DNA of 64,000 nucleotides from positions 38,001-102,000 of the forward strand of contig NW_027437456.1 of the NCBI RefSeq assembly GCF_964204645.1, written 5' to 3'. Below the pieces are notes generated by a model that made no database searches, was not told where the DNA came from, and was given only the letters and a program-made list of their open reading frames with translations. Origin of the DNA: Tubulanus polymorphus. Its lineage: Eukaryota > Animalia > Nemertea. Positions 12,885-56,760 of this stretch are shown piece after piece. Position numbers and translations under genes: made by a program. Position 1 is the first letter of the stretch, and the number at the start of each line of letters is the position of its first letter.

Positions 12885-12921
<37 letters not shown>

Positions 12922-27133: not shown

Positions 27134-27736
27134 ATGTCAAAGAAATCTAATAAGAATAGTATTGATATTGAAAAGACATTAGATGATTTGGGTATAAGTG
27201 ATAATAAAGATACAGTTGTAACTAATTGTGCTCAAGTTAATTGTAATATAGATTATGAATACTATTTATATTGTAAGCATCATCTTGAATTATTAATTGC
27301 TGGCGGGAAATCTAAGGATTTCTTGGGAAAAATAATAACTTTTCAAGAATTAGATGCTATGAAACCCGATAAAGTAATAAAATATTTTAAGATTTATGAA
27401 GAAGCTAGATTAGCTAGAATAAATGATTCTATTTCAGATGGTATTGTCAAATGTTATTCTAAGTTATGTAACCAGTTAATACCAATCAATGATGAAAATA
27501 AATTATATAGTGATTTGAAAAATGACTACTTAGTTATGACTGAATTACAAAAATGGGTCGGTTATGCTTCATTTCAATTAGGATCGGTTATGACATTAAT
27601 TTCTACTGGTGTCATTACATTTTCGAACATCAAGCCTATGGAATGTAAATCAGGTAAGAATGAAACAGATGTACTACAACCAAACGTCGAAACAGAAAAT
27701 GAATCAGAACAAAAATTAACTAAAATAAATGAGTGA
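27134..27736 (+). CDS. Conserved Polinton hypothetical protein, 200 aa
   Basis: LIAGGKSKDFLGK...QELDAM...YFKIYE resembles a protein recurrent in invertebrate Polintons (recognition only); TAAATG start. Confidence 0.65.
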   Translation: MSKKSNKNSIDIEKTLDDLGISDNKDTVVTNCAQVNCNIDYEYYLYCKHHLELLIAGGKSKDFLGKIITFQELDAMKPDKVIKYFKIYEEARLARINDSISDGIVKCYSKLCNQLIPINDENKLYSDLKNDYLVMTELQKWVGYASFQLGSVMTLISTGVITFSNIKPMECKSGKNETDVLQPNVETENESEQKLTKINE

Positions 27737-28122
27737 TGGCGTTAAGAAAAAGGCTAGATCCGAGAAACAAATTAAATGGGCAAGAGAATTAGGTAAAAGA
27801 TCTTCAGAATTAAAAAAAACTAAGAAAAAGAAATTAACTGATATAAATGAATCACAGACTTTATCTGATATTAATTCAAATAATAATCCATCTAATTCTT
27901 CTAATAGTGGAAGAAATAATTACTTATATATTACAATTGGTAACAGTTATTATATTATCCGGTGTAATATATAAATCAAAATTCAAATCTGATGATAAAG
28001 ATGATTCCGATGATAATCAGAAACTTAGTTATCCGTGTACAGACAATAAACCTATTATATCAGAAAATAAGTCAAATCCTAAAACCATTGAAACTAATTC
28101 TAAATTATTATTAATGGATTAA
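27729..28122 (+). pseudogene. Small basic protein with hydrophobic segment, frameshifted
   Basis: Overlapping ORFs 27729-27974 and 27847-28122; TAAATG start. Confidence 0.5.
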
Positions 28123-28128
28123 AATAAG

Positions 28129-29110
28129 ATGAAAAAAGAAGAATATTTAAGAGAGTTATATTATAACCCGGAAAGTGAAGTATCATATTCTAACGTTACA
28201 GAATTATGGGATAAAATTAAATCTGATAATGGTGGTATAAAATATAGTGAATTGAAATCATGGTTACAAAATCAACCAACATATCAAATCCACAAGAAAA
28301 TGGATAAAACTTATTTAACAAGAAAAGTTATGGTTTCATATATCGATCAACAATGGCAAGCTGATTTAATTGACATGAAGAACTTGGAAGAATACAACAA
28401 AGGATATTTCTGGATACTGAATGTTATAGACATATTCAGTAGATACGCATGGTCAATTCCAATCAAAAATATAACTGGAATAGAAGTTACAAATGCTTTT
28501 AAATCTATATTTAAAGAAGCTATTCCAGATAAGATACAATTTGATGAAGGTAAGGAATTTTATAACAAACATTTTAAAAAACTATTATCTGATAACAATG
28601 TAGATTATTTTTCAACACACTCAGATAAAAAAGCATCTATTATAGAAAGATGTAATAAAACATTGAAAACTAGAATGTGGAAATATTTTACTGCTAATGA
28701 AACATATAAATATATCGATGAGTCTATAAATATATTAGATGATTTAGTGAAAGGTTATAATAATTCTAAACATAGTTCTATAAATATGAAACCTATACAA
28801 GCTAGAAAAGAAGATAATTCAGAAATAGTTTGGAATAATTTGTATGGTGCGTTTGTTACACATGATTTCGGTGAACCTAAATTTAAAATAGGACAACACG
28901 TAAGAATATCTAAATATAGAAAAACATTTTATAAAGGTAATACCCCAAGAATTATCACTTGTACCAAATCCAGATGAAATAGAATACAAAATAGAAAGAG
29001 TATTGAAAACAAAAACTCTTAAAAGAAAAAAGTTTGGTGAAATATAAAGGGTACGATGATAAATTTAATGAATGGATTTTATCTAGTAAAATTAAAAGAA
29101 TAAATGAATA
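28129..29110 (+). pseudogene. Retroviral-type (rve) integrase with C-terminal chromodomain; deletion and frameshifts in the C-terminus
   Basis: QWQADLID, IDIFSRY, IQFDEGKEF, KASIIERCNKTLK, YNNSKHSSI. Downstream frames give YKIERVLK...LVKYKGYDDKFNEWI. Confidence 0.95.
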
Positions 29111-29705
29111 AAGATTTATTTATATTCGAACCGCATAATATGTTAGTTACTGGTGTAACCAATTGTGGTAAAACACATTTCATATTAGATTTGTTAGAAA
29201 CTATTTATAAGATAATATAATATTATTCTGCCCCACTTATGAAATGAATAAAACATATAATAGAGATATAGTTAAGATAAAAAAGTTTATTATATTAAAT
29301 CCTAAAACAGTAATAGAAAATTTAGATAATTGTATAAAAATAGCAATTGATACTTATAAAGGATCAAATACATTATTCATTATAGATGATTGCACAAATT
29401 TACATGATTCAAAAGTTAGAGAAAGTGAGTTATGTTATCTAGCTTTCTCTGGGAGACATTTTGGGATAACAACATGGGTTTTAAATCAAAAATATAATTC
29501 AATTGTTAAAGACTTTAGGGAGAATATAAGATTTCTAGTTTTATTTTATAACAAAGATAGAAAATCTATGCAACAATCATTGGAAGAAAATCAAATTATA
29601 CCTACTGAATTACATGATGAATATATGAATAAATTAAAGAATAATCAAGGTTCAAAATTATTACTGAGACTTCAATTTCCCTATGAATATAAGTTTATAA
29701 AATAA
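29104..29705 (+). pseudogene. A32/FtsK-like DNA packaging ATPase, frameshifted
   Basis: From ATG 29104: MLVTGVTNCGKT (Walker A). ORF 29244: FIIDDC (Walker B) and SGRHFGITTWVLNQKY. Confidence 0.92.
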
Positions 29706-29721
29706 CTATTTATATATCTAT

Positions 29722-30050
29722 GTATTAGATACCCTATTAGATACCCTAATACCTGATACCCTATTAGATACCCTAATACCTGATACCCTATTAGACACCT
29801 TAAATACTTAAAACCCCCTTTTTTAAAATAAATATTATTCATATAATTTTTAACCAATTTATTTTTATTTTTTCAACTAATATATGAATAAGTTTGAAAA
29901 TAATAAAGGTTATTTATTATTACTGAGGTTTCAATATAAATTTAAAAAAGAAATATAATTTAAGGTATTTTCAAATAATATATATTAGATACGTATTAGA
30001 TACGTATTAGATACCCTATTAGATACCTTAATACTAAAAACCCCCTTTTT
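29722..30050. repeat. Two clusters of short tattagatac(cc/g) repeats in the intergenic region between convergent gene blocks
   Basis: Clusters at 29722-29822 and 29984-30050, each ending ttaatact..aaaccccc-tttt. Confidence 0.75.
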
Positions 30051-30115
30051 TATTCACTATTATTTTATACAATTTTCAACTAATATTATTATTTGGGTTA
30101 AATATAATTAATATC

Positions 30116-31072
30116 TTAATCACTTTCACTATCATACCCTAACAATTTTCTCAATTTCTCTACCGAATTTTCTTCTTCAAATTCTTTATTATTTTTATGC
30201 TTATTCTTCACCCTTTTTACCGTATCATCAATAGTTGTTTCACTGTTATGCTTACTCATCCTTTCTATCACATCATCAATAGTTTCTTCTTTATGTTTCA
30301 TAGAATCTTTATTATCAATATGCTTATCTGTAACTATATCACCATGTGGGTGCCGTATGGCGCCATTTTCATTATCATCTTTATTAGTGTTTGATCCTAA
30401 TATTTCATTTACAGTGTTTGATCCTAATATTTTATTAGCATCGGTTAAATCTAATTCATCTTTATTAGGTGTTGCTAATAATAAATCTTCATATATTTTT
30501 TCACCATTTACTTTTTTATTTGAAACAAATTTTGTAACATATCTAAATGGGTGTTCTATAAATTCTCTTAAACCAACACGTTCTATAACATTAGTAATTT
30601 GTATTTTTGTATTCATATGTTTATTCCAATTTGATGGGGCGTTTGAAAATTCACCTTTACAATAATCACAATAATTTCTATTTTCACTAACATTTAATAT
30701 TATTGCATTATTTGATGTAGAAGGTATTACATTATTAGATGTAGTAGGTATTACATTATTAGATGTAGTAGGTATTACATTATTAGATGTAGTAGGTATT
30801 ACATTATTAGATGTAGTAGGTATTACATTATTAGATGTAGTAGGTATTACATTATTAGATGTAGAAGGTATTACATTATTATCAATTACATTACTTAAAT
30901 TATCAACAACTTCACTTTTATTATTATCGATTTCTATTAGTTTAGTTTTATAAATTTTGAAAATAGGATCAAATATCAAAGCTATATTACAAGGTATTAC
31001 ATAATATAAACCATCATTATTTTCATGTGTATCGATGTATGGAATATGTTTATATACTTTACCTCCTTCCAT
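30116..31072 (-). CDS. Polinton hypothetical protein, 318 aa, with 7 x NNVIP(T/S)TS repeats and a zinc-finger-like motif
   Basis: 24-nt tandem repeat at 30712-30880; YCDYCK...WNKHMNTK. Confidence 0.7.
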   Translation of the reverse strand: MEGGKVYKHIPYIDTHENNDGLYYVIPCNIALIFDPIFKIYKTKLIEIDNNKSEVVDNLSNVIDNNVIPSTSNNVIPTTSNNVIPTTSNNVIPTTSNNVIPTTSNNVIPTTSNNVIPSTSNNAIILNVSENRNYCDYCKGEFSNAPSNWNKHMNTKIQITNVIERVGLREFIEHPFRYVTKFVSNKKVNGEKIYEDLLLATPNKDELDLTDANKILGSNTVNEILGSNTNKDDNENGAIRHPHGDIVTDKHIDNKDSMKHKEETIDDVIERMSKHNSETTIDDTVKRVKNKHKNNKEFEEENSVEKLRKLLGYDSESD

Positions 31073-31104
31073 GTATTATATATATTTTTATTAAAGTTAA
31101 AATT

Positions 31105-32341
31105 TTAATACTTAACACTATCTAATTGTGTATTTACAATATTTAATTGCGCGTCAGATATAATATAAATGTGCATTTTGAAATTTATTCTTTGTCATGA
31201 ATAATTGTATTCCATCTTTAGTGTTTTGTAATTTTTTTCCAGAACCATGTAATGAATTATCCTCTGTTGTTCTAAAATCTAACCATAATGCATATTTATT
31301 ACCGGTATAATAATCAATTTGATTAATATTACAATTTTCAGATGATTTCACTTTTTCATTCATAAAATGTTTTCTAATTTCTGGCCATTGATCAATCATT
31401 CTCATTCCTTGACAAAATATTTTATTTGCTATTCCTTCGATAGTTATTTCTACTTTTGTTATTTCAGGATTATAATACTTATCAACCTGTATTGCACCAT
31501 TAGTATATGTTGCAATAGTAAAAAATATTAATATACCTTAAATAGATCTTCTTGGGAAGTTAATAATCTCATTAATTATTTCATCATTTGCATTAATACT
31601 TACGGTTTTAAATTTATCAATATAATCATATAATAATGAAAATCCTTGATTGTATTGAGTTTGAATTATACTTGAAATATTTTCATCAGTTACTGTGTCA
31701 TATTCTAAACATATATTCGATAATTTATAACTCATATCTTTAACAACGCTAGATAATACAATTTCATTAACAGTAGCAAATGTTATTTCGAATATAACAT
31801 CTTCTTGAATTGCATATTTATATAAAGGTGCATTATTATTTATCAATTCAAAGTCTAATGGAATTTTATATTTGCGTCCATATATACTTTATATAAATTT
31901 ATCTACAGCATTAGTTAATATTGCATAATGTGCTTCTGATCTTAATTTATTTTCGTTTTCTGATTGGATTCCTTGAAATATCATATTATTTCTGTTTTCT
32001 TTAGTTAACCATAAATCTTTATAATGCATAAATAAATTATAATCATCTAATGAGAAAACTGTTTCTGGACCAATCTTTATTGTTAACTTTTTAATCAAAT
32101 ACCTTCCAACATTATCAACAACATAATTATTATTATTACCAGTTACTTTTATATCAGCTGATAAATAAATACTATTTGGAACATAAAAAGTATTTTGTGT
32201 TAATCGAGGAATTCTAACGTATAAAGTTTCATCGGGATTAATATTAAAAGGGTTATGAGTAATTATATGATGTGATCTTTCTGCTTTAATAGCATTAGAT
32301 ATTCTAGAAATCTTAGAAGGACTTATATAACTCCCACTCAT
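31105..32341 (-). pseudogene. Major capsid protein (double jelly-roll), fragmented
   Basis: ITHNPFNINPDETLYVRIP, DNVGRYLIKK, LSNICLEYD, KYALWLDFRTTEDNSLHGSG and the C-terminus IISDAQLNI. Total about 410 codons. Confidence 0.85.
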
Positions 32342-32361
32342 TTATTTAACAAAAAAATTAA

Positions 32362-33431
32362 TTATTTATTTTTTATCATATTCACTAACCCAAAAATAAT
32401 AGCACTTACAACTGTAATTAAAAATAAAATAATATGTTCAGTAGCAAAGTTAATAATGTTTCCTGCAGATTTCAATATAAAACCAACAATTGATGCAATA
32501 ATTCCTGGTAAAGCTGCAGCAGATTTTTTAGATAGTTCCCATAAATATTTTGCTAATTTCTTTAAACCATCTTTAACTTTATCTTGTATAGAATTATTAT
32601 CATTTGGGGGTTTATCTGGTTTATTGGGAGTAGAAGTAGATTTCAGTGAATTTGATATAGCTAAACCAATTGTTCTAAATAACATAGTTACAGCTGTTAG
32701 AATTGAAAGAATTGTTATTCCTTCAAACTTAAATAATAATTTTATTCTATCTTTCAATGTTATTTTAGAATTTGGTTTTATTAGATATCTTTTAAAAACA
32801 TCTTTTAATCTATCAATATTATAATCATATGATTTTAATTATAATTTAATTTCTTCTTTTTGTAATTCTATGTTATATTCTAAATCATCTTTTTCTTTTT
32901 CTAAACGTAATTCTTTTTGTCTATATTCTATTTCATCAATAACTTTATTATCTCTATCTAATTTTAATTGTTCTATTTCTTTATTCTTATCAGTTAAGTC
33001 TTTTTCTAAAAATCTAATTTTAAAATCTCTTATTTCTTTTTCATGCGCAATTTTATCAGACGCAAGTCTTATACTAATAATTTCTCTAATTGCTTTATCA
33101 GAAAATATATCTAAATCTTCTAATTGTTGATCTGTTGCATCAAGTAATCCCTTCGGTAAAAGTTTTTCAGTTTGAACTTCTCTTGAATTAGGTCTACTAG
33201 TTTCTTGTTCTAAATTATTATCGATTGTTTCAAATAATTTATTAATTCTTTGTTTAAATACTCTTTCATTTTTAATAATTTCTTCTTGTGTTACATCTTC
33301 TATTTCATTACTATTTCTTATTCTTTTAATTCTAGATAGTAATGAGTCAGACTTAAGCAAAGTTGATTCTGCTAATATTTTTTTTTGTTTTTTATAAGAG
33401 ACATTTCATAATCTTCTCCACCTTCTGCCAT
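32362..33431 (-). pseudogene. Coiled-coil protein with C-terminal hydrophobic/amphipathic helices (putative membrane-active virion protein), frameshifted
   Basis: ATG at 33431 (MAEGGED). ORFs 32839-33360 and 32362-32757 (AAALPGIIASIVGFILK). Confidence 0.7.
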
Positions 33432-33446
33432 TTACATAATAAAAAA

Positions 33447-34754
33447 TTAAAATTTAAAATATAATATTCCTCCGATTACAATTCGTATACAGGTTATAGC
33501 TAATTTAACATTTTCATGGGATTTATTATCATCATTAAGTTTAATTATATCATGCTGAATAATATCAGTTTTTATATTTTCTGATGTATTATAATCTTTT
33601 ATTTTAGAATCATTATTTAATTTAATATTATTAGTTTTAGTTTCTGTTGATTGAATGTGTTTTTTATTTTTTTCACCTTCCATTAATTTTGGAGCAGTAA
33701 TAATCTTTTTATTTATATCATTCAATCCAAATGAATTATTTATTATTGCAGTTTTAATTAGATTATTATAACCAATTATATTTCCCATCTTTAATACTAA
33801 ATCATTAGAAATAACAAATAGATTAGGGCCTATACAATAATTTAATCTAATATGTGATTTATCTAAATAATTTTGATATCTTACAATGTTTTCCGGAATC
33901 GATCTATTTTTATCATTATGAATTGAATCTTCAAATAATACTTTGAATTGTTTCTGCGCATCGAATGAAGTGTTATCATTTCCAATTATTGGGGATCTTG
34001 TTTCAACTTGCGCACCTAGAATACATATCAAATAAGTTCTAATAGATTGATTTATTCTTTGTATACCAGCTTTAGTAAAACCTTCACTATTTTCTAAAAT
34101 GAAATTAACCCAACCATTATTGTTTTGTTGTTGTATATTATTATAATATTTTGGTAATTCATTCCAATTTAGTGTTCTTATATCTGAATTTGTCATTATT
34201 TTTCCAAATTCTTTAGTATATAATATTCCTTATCCACCCATTGTTCCAATTTTTGCTCTAAAATCTTTATTTGAATTAATATTAAATTCATTACATATTT
34301 TATAAAACTTAGAAAAATTAATATTATTATTCAATTCTTTAAAATATTTTGAACCTGGTAAAGGACATTCTAATTCATCTAATATTAATTTTATTTGAAA
34401 ATATGTATGAAATCTAAAAAGTGATAACATCAATGGTAAACTTGGTTTGTTTAAATGATCATTCCATCTAATTCCACATCCTGTTGTAGCACAATAAACA
34501 GCAAAATTTAATTGGTTCTGCCAATACTTCATATTTGATTTTAATAACCATTGTTTTGCCTCATTTAAATTTTTGAAATTAATTGTATACACATGAAATA
34601 TATTTTCCATCTTCACATTAAAATTATTACTTTCAGTAACATAAATATATAAATCAATTAATGAATTTAAAACTTCATTTCTATATGTTATATCTTTATT
34701 AAAATCTATTGCTGGAATATTATATTGGAAAGCTTTTGGAAAACTATCTGCCAT
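33447..34754 (-). pseudogene. Conserved Polinton hypothetical protein (WQNQLNFAVYCATTGCG type), split in two
   Basis: Adjacent ORFs 34230-34754 and 33447-34196; motifs FRFHTYFQ and EGFTKAG...SIRTY..CILGAQ; hydrophobic C-terminus. Confidence 0.7.
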
Positions 34755-34887
34755 TTATATAATTAAAAAATTAATAATTAACTAATTCTTTTAATAATTT
34801 ATCTTGTTCTTCAACTGTTATATGACCATTTAAACTTATTATATAATCTAGTGTATTCTTTAATTTATTAATTTCTTTTATATTAGT

Positions 34888-35205
34888 TTAAATTTTATCT
34901 TTATTACTTTTTATATTCAATTTTGAACTTATACCAGTTAATACACTTGAACTTAATCCTAATACACCAATTGATATAGCTAAAGGTGTTAATGGACTGA
35001 ATATTGCTAGAAATGTTATTACAGAACTAATTGTAACCGAACCACTTATAATCAAATAATATATAATTTTAGATTTTAAATATTTTTTCTTTTTAACTTT
35101 TAAGTCACTTTCAAATTCTAATATTTGTTTTTCTAAATATGTTTTTAATTTAGTTTTATTTATATCATGAGGAATAATGTCAATATCATCAACTTTATCT
35201 TCCAT
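34888..35205 (-). CDS. Small two-transmembrane protein, probably C-terminally frameshifted
   Basis: Two hydrophobic stretches; TAAATG start. Confidence 0.6.
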   Translation of the reverse strand: MEDKVDDIDIIPHDINKTKLKTYLEKQILEFESDLKVKKKKYLKSKIIYYLIISGSVTISSVITFLAIFSPLTPLAISIGVLGLSSSVLTGISSKLNIKSNKDKI

Positions 35206-35225
35206 TTATTTAGCAAAAAAAATTA

Positions 35226-35648
35226 CTAATTAGTAAATTTATATGCTACAAATATAACAATAACAGTTCCACCTAAAATCCATATTATTTCATATTTCTT
35301 CTGTTCATTACTTGGGGTATAATAATCTGATAATTTAGGTTTGTATAGATGTAATTTTTCTTTATTGGTTACGGCGTTATATAAACTCATTGCATCATCA
35401 ACTGATTGAAAATCTCTATGTGAAATCTTCTGATCATATAATTCCTTGTTAATATAATCCATATAGTTTTGCCTCTTTTCTCTATATTCTTCTGCTGCTT
35501 TATTGTATTTCTCTAATGCTAAGTTATGTCTTTTTTGTTCTGTTAATGATCCATTTTTATCAATATGCTTAAATAAATAACCACCACCAGTAAATGCTAA
35601 AGCGTTAACAATTGCTGATCCTATAATAGTTTTAACTGCAGAAGCCGT
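35226..35648 (-). pseudogene. Conserved small Polinton protein (VNALAFTGG...KRHNLALE); start codon mutated to ACG
   Basis: The frame is open upstream of ORF 35226-35462 to taaACG at 35648. Confidence 0.7.
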
Positions 35649-35672
35649 TTATTTAGTAAAATAATTATGTAT

Positions 35673-35889
35673 TTATATGGGAGGAATATATTTTTGTTTT
35701 TCCAAATAATCAATAGTTAAATTAGATAAAGTAACTGCTAATGTTAATTTTAAAATATCATTTATATCAAATCAATCAACACACTTCCCATTTTAAATAC
35801 TTTTTTAATACCATTGAATAACCAACAGTTCCAACTGATAGTAATGCTCCATTATATAATCCAGTTATTATCCACTTATTATCACTCAT
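35673..35889 (-). pseudogene. Small hydrophobic Polinton protein, frameshifted
   Basis: MSDNKWIITGLYNGALLSVG...EKQKYIPPI; TAAATG start. Confidence 0.5.
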
Positions 35890-36240
35890 TTATTTATCAA
35901 AAAAATTACTATCATCAAAATATATCTTATTTACGATTAATTCAACATTTATTTCATTACTAGTTTCATTTGTATATATTTCAATTATTATTCTTTTAAT
36001 ATCATCGATGATAAAATCTTCATCTAATTCATAAAATCTTAAAGATTCTCTAATCAAATTAGTAATCTTTTCTACATTTAAAGTTTCTTTATCTATTGTT
36101 GTTTCATACTCAAATGTTGTTTCATTAGAAAATGCAATATTTTTGATATTTGTAATTACATCATTAACGTTAAATTTCATTTCTTTCTCACGTTTAAAAT
36201 CAAATCCAAAACATATACTCGGTCCAAGAGTTATATTCAT
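35890..36240 (-). CDS. Polinton hypothetical protein, 116 aa
   Basis: Open ORF with TAAATG start, tightly packed. Confidence 0.6.
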   Translation of the reverse strand: MNITLGPSICFGFDFKREKEMKFNVNDVITNIKNIAFSNETTFEYETTIDKETLNVEKITNLIRESLRFYELDEDFIIDDIKRIIIEIYTNETSNEINVELIVNKIYFDDSNFFDK

Positions 36241-36256
36241 TTATATAATGAAAAAA

Positions 36257-37015
36257 TTACTCTTTACATCTTATAATTAATTCATAAATTACAGGAAAGT
36301 TATTCAAATCAATTAAATAACCATTGTGATTTCTTATTTCTAATTTAAAATTATTAAATTTAGGAATGCAAGGTTTGAAATCACATTCTGTTAACTTATA
36401 ATTTATTTGCGTTCCAAATTGTTTAACATTCTTTAATGGTAAAATATTTAGTATACTAGAATTACAAATTGTATCTTTAGTTGCTTCGAATGTTTTTGTA
36501 GGATCGATTAAATTGCAATAAATATAAAGGTGTGTAAAAGGTATTATATTTGAATTACCATCTACGTTTCCTGTAACGGTATCTGGTACAATTCCTAACA
36601 GTTTAGCTATAGGTTTTTTTACCATAAATGCATGTTGACTTTCATCATATACCTTTATTTTAATTTTATTTGTGCTATCACTTTTTATAAATCTAATTAA
36701 AAATTTATCATCTTTTCTAATTTTCAACCGTGCTCTTCTATTAATTTCTTGAGCTAGTGTTTCTAAATTGTATAATCCTGGTTTTAAAATTAGATGAAAC
36801 CATTTATCTACATTTCTAATATGAATTAAAAAAGTATTATCTACAATAGTTTTATCCGTTATATTATAAAAAGAATTACATAAACTTATATTAACTAATT
36901 TTAAATCTACACAATTTTTATATTCCCTATCCAATCGAACTAGTAAATTATGAGATTTATAATTTGTAAGTTTTCTAGAATCAACAAATATTCTGTATTC
37001 TTTTAATTCCGCCAT
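36257..37015 (-). CDS. Minor capsid protein (penton, single jelly-roll)
   Basis: IFVDSR, NSFYNI, PGLYN, LYIYCNLI, IRNHNGYLIDLNN pattern; 252 aa; intact. Confidence 0.82.
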   Translation of the reverse strand: MAELKEYRIFVDSRKLTNYKSHNLLVRLDREYKNCVDLKLVNISLCNSFYNITDKTIVDNTFLIHIRNVDKWFHLILKPGLYNLETLAQEINRRARLKIRKDDKFLIRFIKSDSTNKIKIKVYDESQHAFMVKKPIAKLLGIVPDTVTGNVDGNSNIIPFTHLYIYCNLIDPTKTFEATKDTICNSSILNILPLKNVKQFGTQINYKLTECDFKPCIPKFNNFKLEIRNHNGYLIDLNNFPVIYELIIRCKE

Positions 37016-37032
37016 TTATTTTACATATTTTC

Positions 37033-37386
37033 TTATTCGAAATCTATTTCATGGTGCCCCTTTTCATTCTTACCTTTGTATACGAAATAGAAATCACCAG
37101 AACATAATTCTTCTAGATCTTCACTTGATAATCTATGAAATCTATCTGGTAAATATGTTCTGAATTTATATGTATTTCCTTTTAATCCTTCATATTCTAA
37201 GTGTATAACTAATTTATCTCCATAGTTATTAGTAACTGTATCAATATTTGTAATTAGATATTTCTTATGGATTGTTAATTCTGTTAACTTTTTGAATTTA
37301 TAATCTACTGATTTGACATTTGAAGTATCTTTTTTTCTATCCAGAAATAATTTGTTGTTCTCACTGTGTGCTTGTTTACTCTCCAT
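37033..37386 (-). CDS. Putative OB-fold ssDNA-binding protein
   Basis: FKKLTEL...Y.I....VTNNYGDKLVIHL...YLPDRF...FVYKG; lies directly downstream of pPolB. Confidence 0.55.
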   Translation of the reverse strand: MESKQAHSENNKLFLDRKKDTSNVKSVDYKFKKLTELTIHKKYLITNIDTVTNNYGDKLVIHLEYEGLKGNTYKFRTYLPDRFHRLSSEDLEELCSGDFYFVYKGKNEKGHHEIDFE

Positions 37387-37415
37387 TTTAATAACATATT
37401 TTTATTAAAATTTGA

Positions 37416-40400
37416 TTAACACGTTAGAATTCTTTTCCTTATCTCGTTCTCTTTTGTTTCTTCTCTTTTAAATTTTAAGTATTCATCTAAATTACAACCA
37501 TATGCAACTGTATGAATTCCATCATCTAAAATATATCTTTTATCATCAAATGGGTTTAGACTTATCTTTTCAATTTCTTCAATAAACATTTCATGATCTT
37601 CAGATCTTAAACATCTCATCTTATGTTTTCAAACTTCTTCATTGAATATACAATTGATGTAATCTTTGAAATGAATAGTCTTTTCTACTACACTTTTGGT
37701 TATTCCTTTTAACTTTTTAGCTTCATGTTCTTTAGTTTTATATGAATACATTTTAGATCTAATACCAACGAACTCTATCATTTCTTCACCACCTAACTCA
37801 TCCTTAAACTTCCCTGGAACTTTTTTATTATCATCGCTAAACAATTCATGAGTTTTAGAATAATTGCTGAAATCAAAATGATGTTTTGATGTTTTTAAAT
37901 CATCAGTTATGTTATCAGTTTTTATCTTTAATATGTAACTGTCGGTATCAAAATATAAGATTTCTATATGCTTTTCTCCAAAATGAGGTTGTAATATGTT
38001 ATAATAAAATTCATACATTAGTAATTTTGATAATTCTAAAACTGAAGCGCCAACATAGATTGGTTTATTAAATTTCATTGATGTTCTTCTCATCTTAACT
38101 GCAGCTAAATTTTCATCAAATATTCTGTTACCAATGAACTTAGGATATGATTGTAAATGTCTAATTCTTTTACCATTACTGACTAACTCAATATCATTTC
38201 TATTTCTAATATTTTCACAAGTCTTACCATAGAATGCATTATTCATTAACTTGAAGAAATCTTTTTCGAAATCAGTTTTAGCTTCAGTTCTCTGTTTGGT
38301 GTTAAAATCTATATATTTTTCTAACCACTTAGATTGGCTAAATGAATATATCTATGTACTTTTTTTAGAACCATTCCTTGATTCAAATAAAACTTTAACA
38401 TTCTGTAATGTACTACATAATTATATTTATCTTCTTGAGTTACCATTAACTTTTCTGTATGAATATGATTTTCAGGTTTAATTCTTTTTTGATAATTTGA
38501 TAATTCTTCATGAGTTACAGTTTTATGTTCGGGACAGTAAGCTAGATTTCTAGATTTAAATTTAATATGTTCAGGATATTCTAAATCTACAACAAAGAAG
38601 TAACCAGTATCTGAATCATCTGCAATATCTAGAATTCTTTTCTTCCAATCAAATTTATCATTATTTTCATTCTGTAAAACTTCAGTTAATTCAAATACTC
38701 CATAAGGTTGTGGTTCCATCATTGCCCAACCATACAAATTATTTGCATCTATATATAATAACTTATATCCAGGGTTATCATTTACATTGAAATATCTATC
38801 ACCTAATACACCTGAAACTCCTCCTCTTATAGATTTTTCAAATAATAATAATTGATCTATATTTGTTAACAAATCCATTTTTATATTTGTAAATTTTAAT
38901 CCACAATCCCATGTTAACCCTGGTGATGAATAACAATGACATGGATCAATATTGAAATATTTTAGGTTTACATCTCTAAACCTTTCGAATATATCCGATA
39001 ATAATAATACATCTGATTTTAAATATAAATCTACTAATTGCCCATGATTTTCTATTTTGAAATGATTCCAAATATTCAATGTTCTATTATATACTTCATC
39101 TTTAACATATTCATTTTTTAATTCATCATAAAATTGTTCTTTTATTAATTCAGTTATGTTAAAATCATTATGTGATTTATAGAAAGAATATGGAATTGCT
39201 CCTTTATATCTCATTAATTGGAATTCATCATTATTTGGGTAATGTTGCTTTAATATTTTTAATTCATCATCAACTAATGATTTTGATAAGTTATCTAATG
39301 AACTATTTAAAAATCTATATGAATCTATAAATCTTAGGCAACCAAATTGGAATGATATATAATTCTCAGATGTTTTAGCTAACATTTTAAATTTATAAGT
39401 TGGTATTTTATCTTTTGATCTATTTGAATTTAATATTTCTATTTCATTATTGATTTCTTCTATTTTATGACATAACTGTTTGATGAATAAATGAGCATCA
39501 TATCCTGATAAATTATGAAATATTACTGGTACAAAATTAATTTTCTTAGTTTGTAAGTTACAATTCTCATGTGCAGCGCCTCTAAACTTCAAATGATCAT
39601 GGTCTCTTACTTTTTTATCTTTATAATTAAATATCTTTTCACAATAATAACATTTATCTGCAAACGCAAATGCTTCTTTAACTTCTTCTGTCATTATAAT
39701 ATCTATATTTGTATTCAATAATTTACTAAATGTTATTTCATATTCAATTAATAAGTCACAAAAATGATTGATAACATTTTCATTTCTGTAATGATAATAT
39801 TCACTTTCAATTAGTTCTGGATAATCAGATTTTATATATAACCCGAAAGCTGCAGCTGATTGATGAATCTTTTTAATTGTATTTGTTTTTGGTGTTTCAT
39901 CTGAAAAATCATTTTCATTAGAATTTAAGTTCTTTCTTTTATAATATATTTTATTTCTATCTTGATCAGTTAATTCTTTATTTAATGATTCAAAATCTCC
40001 ATATATTACAAATGGTACTTTATTTTTGTAATCATATTTTTTGAATTCTAATATTTTATCCTTTTCATTTGGTAAAACTAATTAAAAATAATCAAGATTT
40101 TCGCATAATTGTTTATGATTTAATAATGTACTTTCATTACTGAATCTATGTAAACATTTTCTACATAGATATATTTTATTATGGTGATCACTTTCTGTTC
40201 TAAAGAATAAATCTATTTGTTTAATCCACATATAATGATTCTCATAATATAATATATCTATAACATCATTTGAATCATAATCTTTTGATAGGTATAAAGG
40301 TTCTAATGTATAATGTTTTATGTTGTTACCTTTTGTATTTGGTAATTTGATTAAATCAAATACATTTATTCTTAAATTATTATCTCTCTATTTTTGGGAT

Positions 40401-41453
40401 GTTTTTAATTATAACAGGATACTTATCTATATTATAATTATTTTCAAATGGTTTATAATGAGTTAATCTAAAACTATGTTGTTTATAATCTTCAACTGGA
40501 TGTAAACAACTTATTATAGCCCATAGAAAACATTTATCATCTTCATTTTGTACACTTATAACAGCATTAGTTTTAAATGGTAGTTTAATATAACTTGATG
40601 CTTCAATATCTGGTTCTTTATAATATGATACATTATTTTCATCAATTGGTTTTGATTTAGTTAACTTATTATATTTTGTGTTATAAACATGTAAAGTCAT
40701 AAATATTATTTCATCAAATATTAAACCAGATCCTTCAAAATATTTCTCTTCTATTTTAGTTTTTACGTCATTATAACATTTATCTAATTTATCATCTTTA
40801 ATATGTTGTTTTGAAATAATATGTTGTGAATGAGAATTTATATTATATATTGGTTTATCTTCAGATTTTATAAACTTTACTTTAACTGATATACTTATTT
40901 TAGGATATTCAACATCAGTTATTATTTTTATTATTTCTTTCATATTTTCTAAATGTTTTTTATTTTCTTCTAATGTTTTTCCTTTATGAAATTTAAACTC
41001 GATAGCTGCTGGGCCAATATCACTTTTAAATGCTTCGGTTATCTCTATATCTTTTTTATTATCTAATGAATTAATATATTTTCTTACATCTTCCATGTAT
41101 GGTCTTTTATTGTTTAATTTATTTTTTATGCTTTTAATTGTCTTCTGTTTCTTATCACTATCTTTATCAAGATAATCTTCACCTAAAATATCATTATTCT
41201 TATTTCCAATATGACTTTTAGATTTTAAATGTTCTTTATAATATCTTTTATCACTGAATGATTGATTACATGTATCACATTCGTATGTTTCTTTTTCATT
41301 CTTTAATTCTTCTAATTTAGTTTCTAATATATCATCTTTATATTCTAGTTTCAATTTATTCTCTAAATGTGTTTTAGTTTTATTGTGTCTTGCTTTTTGG
41401 GATCTATCTATATTGATATTACATGTTGGGCAGTAGTTCTTATTTGCTTCCAT
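37416..41453 (-). pseudogene. polB: Protein-primed family B DNA polymerase (pPolB), multiple frameshifts
   Basis: N-terminal zinc fingers, NEDDKCFLWAI (OTU-like), YGDFES exo I, RDHDH..RGAAHENCN (Endo VII-like insert), FHNLSGYDAH, YIDANNLYGWAM, KLMNNAFYGKT, YFDTDS, LNPFDDKR. Confidence 0.96.
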
Positions 41454-41971
41454 TTTAATACTAAATTTTTTATTAAAATTGATTTTAGAAGTTCAATGAT
41501 TTATATCATACATTATTTCAATCACACTTTACTAACACTTTTAATGTTTAAAAATCTAACTCACACAAATATGAATATTGAAATAATGTTGTAAATATAT
41601 ACTTTTATATCTATTCAATAAGAGCTCACACTTTTATATTGAATAATCTATCAATTTATATGTTATTCATATATATTTTATTCATGTATATAAATATTTT
41701 AAGAGTAATAGGGATAATAGGCTTTCAAGCTAAAGGTTGAACGGGCGGGTGAGTAAAAAATGAAAAACATGAAAATAATAACAATTTCTACTTGAATTAG
41801 GAGTGAAACTCATAAAAATGAAAAATAAATTCGAGAGTGTGAGAATTTATTTTTCATTTTTATGAGTTTCGCGAGTAATTCAAGTAGAAATTGTTATTAT
41901 TTTCATGTTTTTCATTTTTCACGAGCTCGACCGTTCGACCTTTGGCTTGAAAGTCTATTATCCCTAATACT
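41449..41971 (-). repeat. Polinton right TIR, containing a 268-bp terminal hairpin at 41704-41971
   Basis: agtaatagggataataggctttcaagc...gcttgaaagtctattatccctaatact around the loop gagagtgtga. Confidence 0.95.
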
Positions 41972-43218
41972 CATCGCTTCGAAAGGCCGACCTACGTCCG
42001 GCTTTAAGTTACTGCGGAGGACCAGAAATATCTTCTTTTTCGCTCAAAAGACCTTTCTCTTGATATTTCGTCGGAACAAAATTTATTTCGTTCGAACTAA
42101 TAATATTCTGTTCGATTCAACCAATTTGAAAAAATCGTTAGAACAAAGTTGAACAAACTTTTCTGTCCAAACAAAAGGTTTTTCGTTCGAACGATCGTTC
42201 GATCGAACAGGATCGTTTTAATTTGAACAGAATTTTCTTGTCAGATCATTAAGTTTTTCGTTTGAACAAGTATATTGTAAAACGTTTTTTCTCCGAACCG
42301 AAAGTAGTCCGTTCAATTGAAAAGAATTGTTTTCATCCAAACATTCGTTCGAAAAAAATTGTTTTCACTCAACCAAATTTTTTTCCGGGACAAAAAGTTG
42401 TTCATTTCAACAATAACATAGCTTTTTATTTCAAACACATTTTTTTTCAGAATGAAGAAAAGTTTTTGCTCAAACAAAAAGCGTATTGTTCGATCAAATA
42501 GAATTGTTTTCATTCGAACAAGATTTTCTTGTCGGAACATTAAGTTTTTGGGTCAAACAGCGTGTTATGGTCGTTTTGGTAATTTACTCGGTCTGGTATA
42601 TTTTGGATTACTGTGTATGTCATTTGTCAGGACATTAAACAGAAGACGACTTAGGATACTACCTTGCGTGACTCCACTAGTTAGACCGACTTATTCCAAG
42701 GTGAGGCGTTCCGTTGATTTCGGGTACAAGTTTTCGTTCAGAGATAACTGCTGAGCCATTTGGGCGACCTATCATTGATACTGTTTCCTAATAGCCTGTT
42801 TAGTAATGGCTGATGTTGTGCCTTATCAAATGTTTTGTCGAAATCCACCGTTGAACAGCATTCTAAGACTGTGCAGAAAACCCATTATCGCTGCTTTGCA
42901 GTTATATTTTCAATTAGATTTGTACAGGACTATTTTACCTGTTGAGATACAAGTTAAATATCTTCATAGATGTAAATGTTTTGAAGTTGCTGTTGCTGTT
43001 TCTTGCATGCATTGATACAAACTATTGAATCGCTTATTGTTGTATGTGAACTGCAAAAGATAAATCATTTACTAAGATTAAATGTTTCATCAAAAGATAA
43101 ACTTGATTGTTGGACTCAAATTACATGAAAATTGTGAATAGAAAATATAGTCGGTATTTCGTGAGAATCTCGGATCAGCATTCATCAATTGAGTATGTAA
43201 ATATCGTGTGAGAGTGAT

Positions 43219-54550: not shown

Positions 54551-56760
54551 AGTAATAGGGAATATGGGGGTTCAGATCAAAGGTCGAGAGGTCGAGTTCA
54601 TAAAAAATGAAAAAATTTCTCGCACACTCGAATTTATTTTTCATTTTTTATGAACTCGCCCTCTCAACCTTTGATCTGAACCCCCATATTCCCTATTACT
54701 CTTATAATATTCATATATATGAATATGAATAACTTCGAAAATCAATTTTAATAGAAAAATGGATATTAAAATGGAGCCAGAACAATCACAAACTAACAAT
54801 ATTACAAATAATAATAATGGTGTTATAAATATTTATCAGAAGACATGTTGCAAATGTAGAAAACGTAAGCCATTTAAAGATTATTATAAACGTAAGATCG
54901 GCAAAGATGGTTTACGACATAATTGCAAAAGCTGTTATAATCAAAGTAATCAACAATATTATAGAGATAATATTGAAGCAAGCAACGATACAGTTAAGCA
55001 ATGGAAGGAAAATAATCCAGAACGCATTAAAGCGTATCAAAATAAATATCATAAAGAAAGATATCAAACAGATTTTAATTTTAAAATGAAACAATGTCTA
55101 GGTAATAGATCATCACAATTATTCAGTAAAGAAGCGCATTCAGTTACACTATCTAATTTATTGGGGTGTTCAGATGAATTTCTCAAATCATGGATAATAT
55201 ATCAATTCGACGATAAAATGAATGAAAAAAACTATGGTGAATACTTTCATATTGATCATGTGTTGCCGATTTCTAAATTTAACATGAATGATGAACACAA
55301 TCAGAAATTAATCTGGGGCTGGAAGAACTTAAGACCTTTAGAAAAAGTTGAAAATATTAGGAAAGGAAATAAACTAGATATGAAATTATATTTGAAACAG
55401 CCGTGTAAAGCAAAGACATTTGTTGAATTATGGAATTCAACACAGAATGAAAAACACGTTGAATCTTAAGCGTTTATAATAAGAACTCTACTCGAGTCCC
55501 TCGTGTATATAGCCATGTGTGTATATAGCTATCCATATAACTGCCTATATGCATTTATACTAGCATCTGGCGCAGCTATATTCAGTTGAATGGGGAGTAA
55601 TGCCTCATTTGAATATTGATCGAACGTGCTCTTTCAATTGTAAGGAATTAATTAATTTCATCATAAAGAACACCCGTTACCATCCAGGCAAACGTACAGA
55701 AATAATCATCTTGGTCGAAGGTGCGCCACGTTGGCAGTTAGCAATCAACATTCACATACATAGGACGTATTGGATATTCTCTCTCGAAACACAGTTCACA
55801 GTTCTAAATCTAAATGTAAGTACCGTTTTTGTAGTTATTATGAAGTAGGGAAACCTTTAAACATATTTAAGTACAGTAATTCATTTTCACAACAACGCTG
55901 GGTTATTTGTATTGATATATATCTAACGACAGCTCCGTGACTTTGGAATACTCCGAGCTGTAATAAAGTGAAATACAAGCCACTTCCCAAACTCACAAGC
56001 AATGATTTGACTTGTGTTGAATTTTAACATAAACCTGGTTCAACTTCAAGTTATTATTATTTTCTACGCTAGATATCTTTTAGATAACAAAATGAAGACA
56101 ATTCAATCAAGAAGGTGAAGATGGATGGATTCTGAATCAGAAATTATGGATATTTCATCACAAGAGACTGAAGCTGTTTCATCATGCTGTATTATATATG
56201 CCGGAATTGCAGTTGCGCATACGTCAGTCGTTCGGTTGTTATTAATGGTGACGGCTGTTCTGTATTGATTGGTTACAATTCTATGTTTAAATGTTGTAGT
56301 TTACAGAATGAATTATACGATTGACACGTGCGCACTGAGCCAAAGCGGTCTTCTAGGACCGCTTTTCTATTGTTCTCCATTGTTCTATCTTCGATCGCTA
56401 CAATTTGCATAATGAATATATGTGTTTATGAAATAGTAATTCCACCAGGCGTTTCGTTGAATTGATTTTCAGTTGAGGATTTGATATCAAGGATCCGAAA
56501 TGACTTATCTGGACAGTTATAATTACTGCTCCTATTAGATAGACAATAGTAGTGAGATATTGAATCCTAATTTAAATAAAAAGTATTAAAAAAACAATAA
56601 CTTCAACTATATAGTGAATTCTATTATATTTTTAATATTTTCTTTTGCAATTCTAATTGACACTAGATTGAATAGATTTTGATAAGAATTGAATAAAAAA
56701 TTACATATCTTCAAATAGATAGTGAATTCAATTATATTTTTAATATTTTCTTTTCAAAAG
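54551..56760 (+). mobile_element. Left-end fragment of a second, related Polinton
   Basis: Starts AGTAATAGGG with a 150-bp hairpin (54551-54700), then the HNH gene, then blocks homologous to 25660-25930 and 26595-27030. No right end found. Confidence 0.88.
54759..55469 (+). CDS. Intact HNH/His-Me finger endonuclease with N-terminal zinc finger, 236 aa
   Basis: KTCCKC...KDGLRHNCKSC; FHIDHVLP...WKNLRPLEKVENIRKGNK. Confidence 0.88.
   Translation: MDIKMEPEQSQTNNITNNNNGVINIYQKTCCKCRKRKPFKDYYKRKIGKDGLRHNCKSCYNQSNQQYYRDNIEASNDTVKQWKENNPERIKAYQNKYHKERYQTDFNFKMKQCLGNRSSQLFSKEAHSVTLSNLLGCSDEFLKSWIIYQFDDKMNEKNYGEYFHIDHVLPISKFNMNDEHNQKLIWGWKNLRPLEKVENIRKGNKLDMKLYLKQPCKAKTFVELWNSTQNEKHVES

What the first reader, a model, noticed from the sequence alone, without database searches (positions are those of the whole stretch)
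41704..41971. Polinton ends are long strand-asymmetric hairpins that would form a self-priming 3' end
Seen: each terminus folds back on itself (right 41704-41971, 268 bp; left 24449-24655; second element 54551-54700). The terminal AGTAATAGGG is repeated internally in inverted form, so the last 3' base pairs flush and leaves the genome as template. On the strand whose 3' end is terminal, the built-in mismatches are T-G wobbles, tandem G-A/A-G and G-G (gtgagt/acgagc, aggagtg/cgcgagt), and the loop is bracketed by GA...GA. On the other strand the same positions are destabilising A-C, C-T and C-C. Known: Polintons are modelled as protein-primed with plain TIRs forming a panhandle, whereas imperfect self-priming terminal hairpins typify parvoviruses. 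Inference: this lineage may use hairpin-primed second-strand synthesis, or have an ssDNA/closed-end stage, alongside or instead of terminal-protein priming. I do not recall this being described for Polintons but cannot check.
Basis: partly seen in the sequence, partly recalled or inferred. Interest (0 to 1): 0.92.

Follow-up and report, generated by a model that had tools for sequence, protein, structure and literature searches.

The report
Fold-back palindromes at Polinton ends
A decayed virus-like transposon (Polinton) in an animal genome ends in long imperfect palindromes that let the 3'-ended DNA strand fold back on itself, and a second, diverged copy keeps the same fold through matching changes in both arms, so the fold looks functional, though how it is used is not shown.

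Summary
Window 24449-41971 is a 17.5 kb Polinton with a 6-bp target duplication, ~445/507-bp terminal inverted repeats (TIRs), a protein-primed polymerase (pPolB), an rve integrase, an A32-like ATPase and capsid pieces. pPolB and the integrase are broken.

Its outermost 268 nt (right end) and 207 nt (left end, shortened) are imperfect palindromes that reach the last base. So are the outermost 150 nt of a second, ~20% diverged fragment (54551-~56770).

- **Co-variation:** across the two elements, 11 of the 52 outermost pairs changed on both sides and stayed paired.
- **Shared mismatches:** two non-Watson-Crick positions, 35 and 42 nt from the tip, occur in all three termini.
- **Orientation:** all three termini face the same way.
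- **Strand asymmetry:** the 3'-ended strand always folds better, by 4.7-11.5 kcal/mol. This rests on few independent events.

Self-priming is geometrically possible but untested. The pPolB keeps its terminal-protein-like N-terminal domain, no Rep-type nickase is present, and a fixed orientation argues against symmetric hairpin transfer. I favour fold-back ends that work alongside protein priming.

A July 2026 preprint already reports terminal palindromes, with a hairpin-priming model, in protist virophages and a Polinton-like virus.

The parts
24443..24448 (.). Left copy of the 6-bp target-site duplication (CATCGC)
   Evidence: Read directly; identical hexamer at 41972-41977.
24449..41971 (.). 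Polinton/Maverick element E1, 17.5 kb, GC about 0.23 against about 0.36 in the flanks
   Evidence: Composition; TIRs; gene content.
24449..24894 (.). Left terminal inverted repeat
   Evidence: pairs I2, I3; 8 substitutions and 2 indels against the right copy over about 445 nt.
24449..24655 (-). Left terminal palindrome, 207 nt; its inner arm is 61 nt shorter than in the right copy. The minus strand has the terminal 3' end.
   Evidence: I12; -49.8 against -57.9 kcal/mol; alignment A1.
25128..25574 (+). HNH (beta-beta-alpha-Me) nuclease-like ORF next to the left TIR; shorter than its homologue in E2
   Evidence: PHROG 1035 'endonuclease VII', E 2e-5; alignment A2.
28129..29105 (+). rve integrase, broken (2 frame changes)
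   Evidence: Pfam rve, E 6e-9. Relatives of 359-362 aa carry a chromodomain. tblastn counts.
29244..29705 (+). A32-like packaging ATPase ORF; covers only the middle of the family profile, so probably incomplete
   Evidence: Pfam Pox_A32, 25.7 bits against a cut-off of 22.8, profile positions 80-164 of 242.
31538..32341 (-). Major capsid protein pieces (at least two ORF pieces); breaks not counted
   Evidence: Pfam Capsid_N, E 7e-4, below the cut-off; ORF layout.
37497..41453 (-). [quoted passage not shown]
   Evidence: Pfam DNA_pol_B_2, E 1e-11. Relative P0126, 79% identical. Counts. Invariant Cys in A3. Model and fold matches.
41465..41971 (.). Right terminal inverted repeat
41704..41971 (+). 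Right terminal palindrome, 268 nt, arms about 129 nt, 10-nt loop. The plus strand has the terminal 3' end, which pairs flush.
   Evidence: (I5).
41972..41977 (.). Right copy of the 6-bp target-site duplication (CATCGC)
54551..56770 (.). Element E2: a left-end fragment of a related Polinton, colinear with E1 24449-27064 at 74-88% identity. No second end lies in the window.
   Evidence: blastn and tblastx; pattern search.
54551..54700 (-). E2 terminal palindrome, 150 nt, 64 pairs of which 2 are non-Watson-Crick
   Evidence: (I9).
54759..55469 (+). E2 HNH nuclease-like ORF, 236 aa, open, with an N-terminal Cys-rich motif
   Evidence: PHROG 1035, E 8e-14. Five homologues. The model is poor and the fold search is not significant.

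Best explanation
The terminal palindromes are an inherited, selected part of this Polinton lineage's ends. They are not chance and not insertion debris.

They act when the end of the linear genome is single-stranded. The strand that carries the terminal 3' end folds back locally, so its outer arm lies on its inner arm.

I think the most likely use is alongside protein priming.

1. The fold rebuilds a duplex end on a displaced single strand. It does this locally, in place of or in addition to the long-range pairing of the two TIRs. The element's terminal-protein-polymerase can then start there and unfold the hairpin as it copies to the tip.
2. A shortened 3' end can be re-templated from the inner arm.

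**Shown:**
- The anatomy of the ends.
- Co-variation between the arms.
- The same orientation at all three termini.
- The direction of the strand bias.
- A terminal-protein-like domain in the pPolB.

**Inferred:** that the fold forms in vivo, and everything about its use. Whether the flush 3'-OH is also extended as a primer stays open.
For: **Constraint on pairing**
- Across E1 and E2, 94% of cells in the 52 outermost pairs are paired.
- 11 pairs changed on both sides, matched by 0 of 500 shuffles; slid controls are 32-47% paired.
- The termini diverge about as fast as the adjoining coding DNA: 77-81% against 74-88% identity.

**Arms and their mismatches**
- The outermost 27-34 pairs are perfect in E1-left and in E2. 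They hold 8 of the 11 double changes, including transversion types. Re-templating of the outer arm from the inner arm would produce this.
- Non-Watson-Crick positions 35 and 42 are shared by all termini. Each lies in one copy of a hexamer (GGTCGA) that is intact twice in the outer arm and altered once per copy in the inner arm, in both elements (sequences).

**Orientation and strand bias**
- One orientation at three of three termini.
- The 3'-ended strand is more stable at three of three termini, against the local GC skew.

**Protein priming retained**
- The full-length relative aligns over 1312 of 1319 residues.
- The OTU-type Cys is invariant in 30 relatives.
- The best PDB fold matches of the N-terminal model are Y-family little-finger domains, as published for the Polinton terminal-protein domain.
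- Viral fold matches are the N-terminal regions of adintovirus, MELD-virus and bidnavirus-like polymerases.

**Form that integrated**
- The integrated copy carries the whole palindrome as duplex, bounded by the target duplication. The integrating DNA therefore had open, extended ends.

**Precedent**
- In Streptomyces telomeres, palindromic 3' strands with purine-purine loop pairs work together with a terminal protein, including fold-back repair (PMC5449611).
Against: - Only two independent lineages are available, and both copies are dead. E1 has a broken pPolB and a broken integrase, and E2 is a fragment.
- Conservation of the two mismatches is not significant on its own, because 32 of 52 pairs never vary.
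- The strand bias rests on 5 to 11 events.
- The terminal-protein fold matches have E about 0.02 and low TM-scores.
- Three double changes lie deeper than the conserved mismatches. Simple deep re-templating therefore cannot explain everything.
- No data exist on the extrachromosomal form.
- The one published survey of such palindromes says they go mostly with non-pPolB replicases.
Confidence: 0.4

Rival explanations
1. The reader's model, self-primed 'rolling hairpin' synthesis. The flush 3'-OH of the folded end is extended by the polymerase along the genome. The resulting turn-around molecule is then resolved by a nuclease. This happens with protein priming or instead of it.
For: - The geometry is right: the last base pairs with the first base of the inner arm and the genome is left as template.
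- Imperfect palindromes carry conserved mismatches.
- An HNH/endonuclease-VII-like ORF lies next to the left end in both elements.
- A weak Endonuclease_7 motif lies inside the pPolB relative (below the cut-off).
- The same model has been drawn for protist virophages and a Polinton-like virus.
Against: - No HUH/Rep nickase is present.
- A terminal-protein-like domain is retained.
- All three termini share one orientation. A persistent strand bias is incompatible with symmetric hairpin transfer, so resolution would have to be asymmetric.
- HNH genes in these elements are usually taken for homing endonucleases.
- The HNH model is poor and matches no junction resolvase significantly.
Confidence: 0.2
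2. The palindrome works as duplex DNA. Both arms are binding sites for the same protein (integrase, terminal-protein-polymerase or packaging ATPase) in inverted order, or the region is a packaging or maturation signal or part of the promoter of the end-proximal genes. Intrastrand pairing plays no role.
For: - The tandem hexamer is conserved in the outer arm and spoiled in the inner arm, in both elements.
- An A/T-rich motif (AAAATGAAAAA) is repeated within the arms.
- The end-proximal ORFs start 59-250 nt inside the palindrome.
- In vaccinia, telomere mismatches matter for virion maturation (title cited).
Against: - Complementarity is kept over the whole 64-130 nt, spacers included, and not only at motif-sized patches.
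- E1 has about 59 extra pairs on both arms in register.
- The type of non-Watson-Crick pair is biased by strand. That bias means nothing for a duplex site.
Confidence: 0.15
3. The palindrome is a neutral by-product. An ancestor acquired an inverted duplication of its tip by template switching or snap-back of a strand-displacing polymerase, or by annealing at a break. The duplication was then simply inherited.
For: - The Halocafeteria preprint names accidental annealing as the alternative.
- Hairpin derivatives of a protein-primed plasmid are on record (kalilo reference).
- The integrated copies decay freely. Three of the four point differences between the two E1 hairpin copies break a pair; the fourth lies in the loop. 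One arm has also lost 61 nt.
Against: - Eleven double changes keep pairing, against four one-sided changes and two further positions unpaired only in the E1 copies, over ~20% divergence; 0 of 500 shuffles match this.
- E2 has no uncompensated change in 64 pairs beyond the two shared mismatches.
Confidence: 0.08
4. The 268-bp unit is a separate miniature element, two Polinton tips joined together, that sits at the ends by nested insertion.
For: - The unit is bounded by two proper tips in inverted order.
- Other short fold-back repeats occur in the window (I8, I13).
Against: - No target duplication flanks the unit itself.
- It is present at both ends of E1 and in E2, in the same place and orientation, and it is continuous with the rest of the TIR.
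- No solo copy occurs in the window.
Confidence: 0.04

Closest known systems
Terminal palindromes in endogenous virophages and one Polinton-like virus subtype of Halocafeteria seosinensis (bioRxiv 10.64898/2026.07.28.741278)
   Same: The palindromes lie inside the TIRs, directly next to the target duplications of rve-integrated elements of the same virus supergroup. A hairpin-priming model has been proposed for them.
   Different: - Those palindromes are about 52 nt, from a protist, and are said to go mostly with non-pPolB replicases.
- Here they are 150-268 nt, in a classical pPolB Polinton of an animal genome.
- Arm co-variation, shared mismatches, fixed orientation and a strand bias are shown here; the passages I read do not mention them.
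Streptomyces linear-replicon telomeres (PMC5449611, PMC4513846)
   Same: Terminal-protein-capped ends whose 3' strand folds into palindromic hairpins with purine-purine (sheared G:A) loop pairs. The fold-back serves as template to restore lost 3' bases and works together with protein priming.
   Different: - Several short palindromes rather than one long one.
- Replication starts internally.
- The proteins are unrelated (Tap/Tpg).
- Bacterial.
Parvovirus terminal hairpins (rolling-hairpin replication)
   Same: Imperfect terminal palindromes whose 3' end pairs and can prime. Mismatch 'bubbles' can fix one orientation at an end.
   Different: - Parvoviruses have ssDNA genomes of 4-6 kb.
- They need an HUH nickase-helicase, which is absent here.
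- Many show flip/flop, which is not seen here.
- This element has a protein-primed polymerase with a terminal-protein-like domain.
Adenovirus, PRD1 and phi29-type protein-primed replicons, and the Kapitonov-Jurka Polinton model
   Same: pPolB with a terminal-protein domain, and TIRs. The displaced strand restores a duplex origin by pairing of inverted repeats.
   Different: The known systems pair the two distant ends, forming a panhandle or racket. Here each end can restore the duplex on its own.
Poxvirus, asfarvirus and chlorovirus hairpin telomeres
   Same: A/T-rich, incompletely paired terminal hairpins with functional mismatches.
   Different: - Those ends are covalently closed, occur as flip and flop, and are resolved by a RuvC-like enzyme.
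- Here the integrated form carries the whole palindrome as open duplex.
- No such resolvase was found here.
Bidnaviruses (PMC4061559)
   Same: A Polinton-derived pPolB with TIRs in a parvovirus-derived ssDNA virus. Fold matches of the N-terminal pPolB piece include such polymerases.
   Different: Their inverted terminal repeats are reported not to form hairpins.

Membership tests
Polinton / Maverick | [quoted passage not shown] | tested here: met
   Pfam DNA_pol_B_2, E 1e-11. A 1319-aa relative, 79% identical, aligns over 1312 residues. The gene is broken.
Polinton / Maverick | Retrovirus-like (rve) integrase | tested here: met
   Pfam rve, 36.5 bits against a cut-off of 32.6. 586 relatives, named ones from animals. 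The gene is broken.
Polinton / Maverick | Long terminal inverted repeats and a 6-bp target-site duplication | tested here: met
   TIRs of about 445/507 nt, 97-98% alike. CATCGC on both sides.
Polinton / Maverick | Capsid module: double jelly-roll capsid protein, packaging ATPase, maturation protease | tested here: inconclusive
   ATPase above the cut-off. Capsid_N below the cut-off. No protease domain among ORFs of 90 aa or more.
Protein-primed linear replicon | Terminal protein (PRD1/adenovirus-type D1 domain) fused to or beside the polymerase | tested here: inconclusive
   The model of the N-terminal piece has pLDDT 83-94 over residues about 130-260. Its best PDB matches are Y-family little-finger domains at E about 0.02, probability 0.9-0.99. 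That is the published signature of D1. There is no sequence match in the PDB.
Protein-primed linear replicon | [quoted passage not shown] | not testable with these tools
   This needs data on the extrachromosomal DNA.
Parvovirus-type rolling-hairpin replicon | Imperfect terminal palindrome whose 3' end pairs and leaves the genome as template | tested here: met
Parvovirus-type rolling-hairpin replicon | HUH (Rep/NS1) site-specific nickase | tested here: not met
   No such domain in any ORF of 90 aa or more of E1. Only an HNH-type nuclease ORF is present.
Parvovirus-type rolling-hairpin replicon | Flip and flop forms of the termini | tested here: inconclusive
   Three of three termini have the same orientation. 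With random inversion this has probability 0.25.
Parvovirus-type rolling-hairpin replicon | Single-stranded packaged genome | not testable with these tools
   Only integrated copies are available.
Covalently closed hairpin telomere (pox/asfar/chlorovirus type) | Ends closed at the palindrome axis; RuvC-like resolvase | tested here: not met
   The integrated DNA carries both arms and the loop as duplex inside the target duplication. The integrating form therefore had open, extended ends. No resolvase domain was found. A closed intermediate cannot be excluded.
Terminal-palindrome elements of the Halocafeteria preprint | Palindrome inside the TIR, adjacent to the target duplication | tested here: met
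   compared.
Terminal-palindrome elements of the Halocafeteria preprint | Association with non-pPolB replication genes | tested here: not met
   This element carries a pPolB.

The most novel reading that the evidence does not exclude
An animal Polinton lineage copies its ends by a hybrid mechanism. A protein-primed-type polymerase extends the folded-back 3' end. The conserved mismatches and the outer-arm hexamers direct a one-sided resolution, possibly by the element's own HNH/endonuclease-VII-like nuclease, so the ends never invert. That would be a dsDNA virus-like element using parvovirus-like hairpin priming without a Rep protein.
Probability: 0.12. Interest if true: 0.9.

Novelty: new variant of a known kind. 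Interest (0 to 1): 0.6.

Why it matters
**Open question.** How Polintons replicate and rebuild their ends outside the chromosome has never been observed. The standard picture is protein priming plus a long-range pairing of the two TIRs.

**What this locus adds.** A lineage whose ends each carry a conserved, polar, self-complementary structure offers a concrete alternative: a local fold-back origin, end repair, or self-priming. Sequence census alone can test it.

**Wider pattern.** If the pattern holds across copies, it links Polintons with other linear replicons that combine terminal proteins and palindromic 3' strands. It also extends the very recent report of terminal palindromes from protist virophages to pPolB Polintons of animals.

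**Annotation.** Terminal palindromes of this length are likely to be collapsed or trimmed in assemblies and in consensus libraries.

Tried and rejected
**Hypotheses rejected**
- Nested miniature element: no target duplication flanks the 268-bp unit, and the same arrangement is seen at all termini.
- Regional base skew as the cause of the G-rich mismatches: the local skew on the same strand runs the other way.

**Searches that gave nothing**
- Rfam over the whole window.
- Pfam on the HNH-like ORF.
- PDB sequence searches with the HNH ORF, the N-terminal pPolB piece and the full-length relative.
- Model of the HNH ORF: poor, pLDDT 65, and its fold search gave no significant match. Its specificity is therefore unknown.
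- Kapitonov & Jurka 2006 and Pritham et al. 2007 are not in the library. I could not check whether they mention such ends.

**Host**
- Not identified. The relatives of the integrase and of the flanking Helitron that carry an organism name are all, or nearly all, animal proteins at 34-60% identity. Nothing suggests human DNA.

- A permutation null that would have rewritten the termini.
- Any joined read-through of the broken genes; their pieces were searched apart.

- One search printed the bounds of the three tblastn pieces in the relative's protein coordinates, which indirectly places the two frame changes of the pPolB.
- One search printed the positions of the differences between the two TIR copies.
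- I repeat neither list here, and nothing was deleted.
Full report
**1. What is there**

Window 24449-41971 is a 17.5 kb block with GC about 0.23, set in flanks of about 0.36.
- It starts AGTAATAGGG, ends with the inverted form of that decamer carrying one mismatch, and is flanked on both sides by CATCGC, a 6-bp target-site duplication.
- Its ends are inverted repeats of about 445 nt (left) and 507 nt (right), 97-98% alike.

Gene content:
- A protein-primed family B polymerase (Pfam DNA_pol_B_2, E 1e-11).
- An rve integrase.
- An A32-like packaging ATPase.
- Weak capsid pieces.
- An HNH-type nuclease ORF next to the left repeat.

This is a Polinton/Maverick, here called E1. It is decayed.
- The polymerase has 2 frame changes and 2 in-frame stops, counted against a 1319-aa relative that aligns over 1312 residues.
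- The integrase has 2 frame changes.
- The ATPase ORF covers only the middle of its family profile, and the capsid gene is in at least two pieces. I did not count those breaks.

A second element, E2, begins at 54551. It is colinear with the left 2.6 kb of E1 at 74-88% identity and stops being recognisable at about 56770. It therefore contributes one terminus only.

**2. Host, and what that meant for the work**

The flanks are Helitrons with OTU, Rep, PIF1 and endonuclease domains.
- The relatives of one of these Helitron proteins that carry an organism name are all from animals: hemichordates, fish, mussels, a sea cucumber.
- The named relatives of the integrase are mostly from animals too: a nemertean, amphioxus, a nematode.
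- The host is a metazoan that I could not identify. Nothing suggests human DNA.

The relatives of this element are therefore virus-like elements of animals. I did not fetch any related DNA, and I worked with the two copies in the window, protein-level searches and the literature. This is the main limit of the report.

**3. The observation**

It is confirmed.
- *Right end, 41704-41971.* An imperfect palindrome with arms of about 129 nt and a 10-nt loop.
- *E2 end, 54551-54700.* 64 pairs, of which only two are non-Watson-Crick.
- *Left end of E1, 24449-24655.* The same structure with an inner arm 61 nt shorter.
- *Boundaries.* The terminal decamer occurs six times in the window with at most one mismatch, always as an outer or inner boundary of these palindromes. 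The last 3' base therefore pairs flush and the genome is left as a 5' extension.
- *Folding.* As single-stranded DNA the stretches have z-scores of -12 to -25 against shuffles. The hairpin remains the dominant structure when the last 600 nt are folded.

**4. Strand asymmetry**

At all three termini the strand with the terminal 3' end is the more stable one, in kcal/mol:
- Right end: -111.0 against -99.5.
- E2: -70.8 against -66.1.
- Left end: -57.9 against -49.8.

At the right end, 13 of 14 non-Watson-Crick stem positions on that strand are G-T or purine-purine. Three positions are private to the right copy and so are later decay. Leaving them out, 11 of 11 are G-T, G-A or G-G.

The sign test gives 0.001 if the positions are independent and 0.06 if the clusters count once.

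Local composition does not cause the bias. The neighbouring non-palindromic part of the repeat has a GC skew of -0.27 on the same strand, while the mismatch positions hold G 18: C 1.

I did not run a permutation that rewrites the mismatches, because that would have generated changed sequences of the element.

**5. Is the fold maintained?**

I aligned the three termini on their 3'-ended strand (A1) and counted the 52 outermost pairs.
- 94% of cells are paired.
- 11 pairs differ on both sides between E1 and E2 and stay paired.
- Four pairs differ on one side only.
- Two further positions (48 and 49 from the tip) are unpaired in the E1 copies only.
- None of 500 shuffles reaches these values. Sliding the partner by 1-3 columns drops pairing to 32-47%.

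The termini diverge as fast as the adjoining coding DNA. What is kept is the pairing, not the sequence.

Two non-Watson-Crick positions, 35 (T-G) and 42 (G-A) from the tip, are present in all three termini. Each falls in one copy of a hexamer (GGTCGA) that is intact twice, 8 nt apart, in the outer arm of both elements and altered once per copy in the inner arm. With only two lineages this conservation is not significant by itself. It does show that the arms were not wholly copied from each other since the lineages split.

The loops are asymmetric and align directly. All three termini therefore have the same orientation.

E1 carries about 59 more pairs than E2 on both arms, in register. The one-arm 61-nt loss in E1-left overlaps the part that E2 lacks on both arms, so this part is prone to slippage.

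After integration the structure decays freely. The two E1 copies differ at four points within the palindrome: three break a pair in one copy, and the fourth lies in the loop.

**6. How it most likely works**

The integrated copy holds both arms and the loop as duplex inside the target duplication. The DNA that integrated therefore had open, extended ends, not ends closed at the palindrome axis.

The polymerase lineage keeps its N-terminal region.
- The relative aligns from residue 1.
- A Cys that fits the OTU-type protease motif is invariant in 30 relatives.
- A model of the N-terminal piece (pLDDT 83-94 over residues about 130-260) finds N-terminal parts of adintovirus, MELD-virus and bidnavirus-like polymerases among viral models.
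- Its best solved-structure matches are the little-finger domains of Y-family polymerases (E about 0.02). Krupovic and colleagues report exactly this for the terminal-protein (D1) domain of Polinton polymerases (PMC11161782).

Protein priming is therefore probably retained.

A strand bias can persist only if the palindrome never inverts, and the single orientation agrees with that. This fits end-to-end copying from a protein primer, or a one-sided resolution. It does not fit symmetric hairpin transfer.

My preferred reading has two parts.
1. The 3'-ended strand, when single-stranded, folds back locally. This restores a duplex end for the terminal-protein-polymerase without needing the other end of the genome.
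2. A shortened 3' end can be re-templated from the inner arm. The perfect outermost 27-34 pairs, which hold 8 of the 11 double changes including transversion types, are what such re-templating would leave.

Streptomyces telomeres are a documented case. There a terminal protein works with palindromic 3' strands, purine-purine loop pairs and fold-back repair (PMC5449611).

All of this is inference. Nothing here shows the fold in vivo.

**7. Rivals**

Against it: there is no Rep-type nickase, HNH genes in these elements are usually taken for homing endonucleases, and the HNH model matched nothing significantly.
- *A purely duplex role (binding sites, packaging signal, promoter).* This does not explain full-length complementarity or a bias in mismatch type by strand.
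- *A neutral by-product.* The co-variation contradicts this.
- *A nested miniature element.* This is excluded by the missing target duplication around the unit and by its identical placement at all termini.

**8. What is known**

The standard Polinton model is protein priming after pairing of the two repeats (as summarised).

A preprint of July 2026 on Halocafeteria seosinensis reports palindromes inside the repeats and next to the target duplications in four virophage subtypes and one Polinton-like virus subtype. It draws a hairpin-priming model and notes that the palindromes go mostly with non-pPolB replicases and particular rve integrases.

Bidnaviruses, which carry a Polinton-derived polymerase, are reported not to form terminal hairpins.

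Five full-text searches found no description of such ends in pPolB Polintons of animals. The two founding papers are not held.

I therefore rate this a new variant of a known kind. It is the same kind of terminal palindrome, found in a classical pPolB Polinton of an animal. It is three to five times longer, and it comes with evidence for constraint, polarity and strand bias.

**9. Slips and steps left out**

- One search printed the bounds of the tblastn pieces in the relative's protein coordinates, which indirectly places the polymerase frame changes.
- One search printed the positions of the differences between the two repeat copies.
- I repeat neither list, and nothing was deleted.
Broken genes were searched piece by piece.
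- I did not fetch related DNA and did not run a rewriting permutation.

**10. Verdict**

- The mechanism is open between a fold-back origin with end repair alongside protein priming (my preference, 0.4) and self-priming (0.2).
- Interest is 0.6.

Noticed in passing
window 101-5089 (minus strand) and 44845-51245 (minus strand): Two related Helitron copies of the Helentron type, with OTU protease, Helitron_like_N Rep, PIF1 helicase and an Exo_endo_phos endonuclease. They are split into several ORFs. Named relatives are all from animals.
   Followed up: partly
window 54477-54550 and 53068-53111: E2 abuts a 16-nt motif (ACGATGACGGCATACT) that occurs twice within 75 nt. That motif is part of an inverted repeat with 53068-53111 (I17). 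E2 seems to sit at or in the end of another repeat element.
   Followed up: no
window 6557-7701, also 8668-8752: A large fold-back repeat with arms of 402 nt, 96% complementary, 341 nt apart, plus a third partial copy (I1 and I6). It is unrelated to the Polinton.
   Followed up: no
window 18076-18271 and 58463-58787: Two further short fold-back repeats, with arms of 77 nt and 55 nt (I8 and I13), probably miniature transposons. Hairpin-forming repeats are therefore not rare in this genome.
   Followed up: no
window 30116-31072 (minus strand): An E1 ORF of 318 aa with about nine tandem copies of a 7-residue unit (NVIPTTS-like) and a C2H2-like motif. Only weak, sub-threshold zinc-finger family matches.
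   Followed up: no
proteins P0089 and P0114 (relatives of the E1 integrase): Two integrase relatives carry a precomputed Pfam PF08398 domain beside rve. From memory, that is the parvovirus coat protein N-terminal / phospholipase A2 family. It could be a fusion or a gene-calling artefact.
   Followed up: no
protein P0126 residues about 592-629; matching part of window 38321-39718 (minus strand): The polymerase has a Cys/His motif just before the exonuclease domain. It gives a weak Endonuclease_7 (recombination endonuclease VII) match, E 0.0095, below the cut-off.
   Followed up: partly
window 24449-24467 and 41953-41971: The first 19 nt of E1 contain an imperfect 9-nt direct repeat (GTAATAGGG / ATAATAGGC). 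It is weaker in E2. Short terminal repeats are used for slide-back in protein priming, so this may matter.
   Followed up: no
window 22751-22926 and 59368-59543: An inverted repeat of 176 nt, 77% complementary, that brackets both Polinton copies at a distance of 36 kb (I4). These are probably two copies of a dispersed repeat.
   Followed up: no
window 12886-13359: An ORF that opens with a long Met/Val run (ATG/GTG microsatellite).
   Followed up: no
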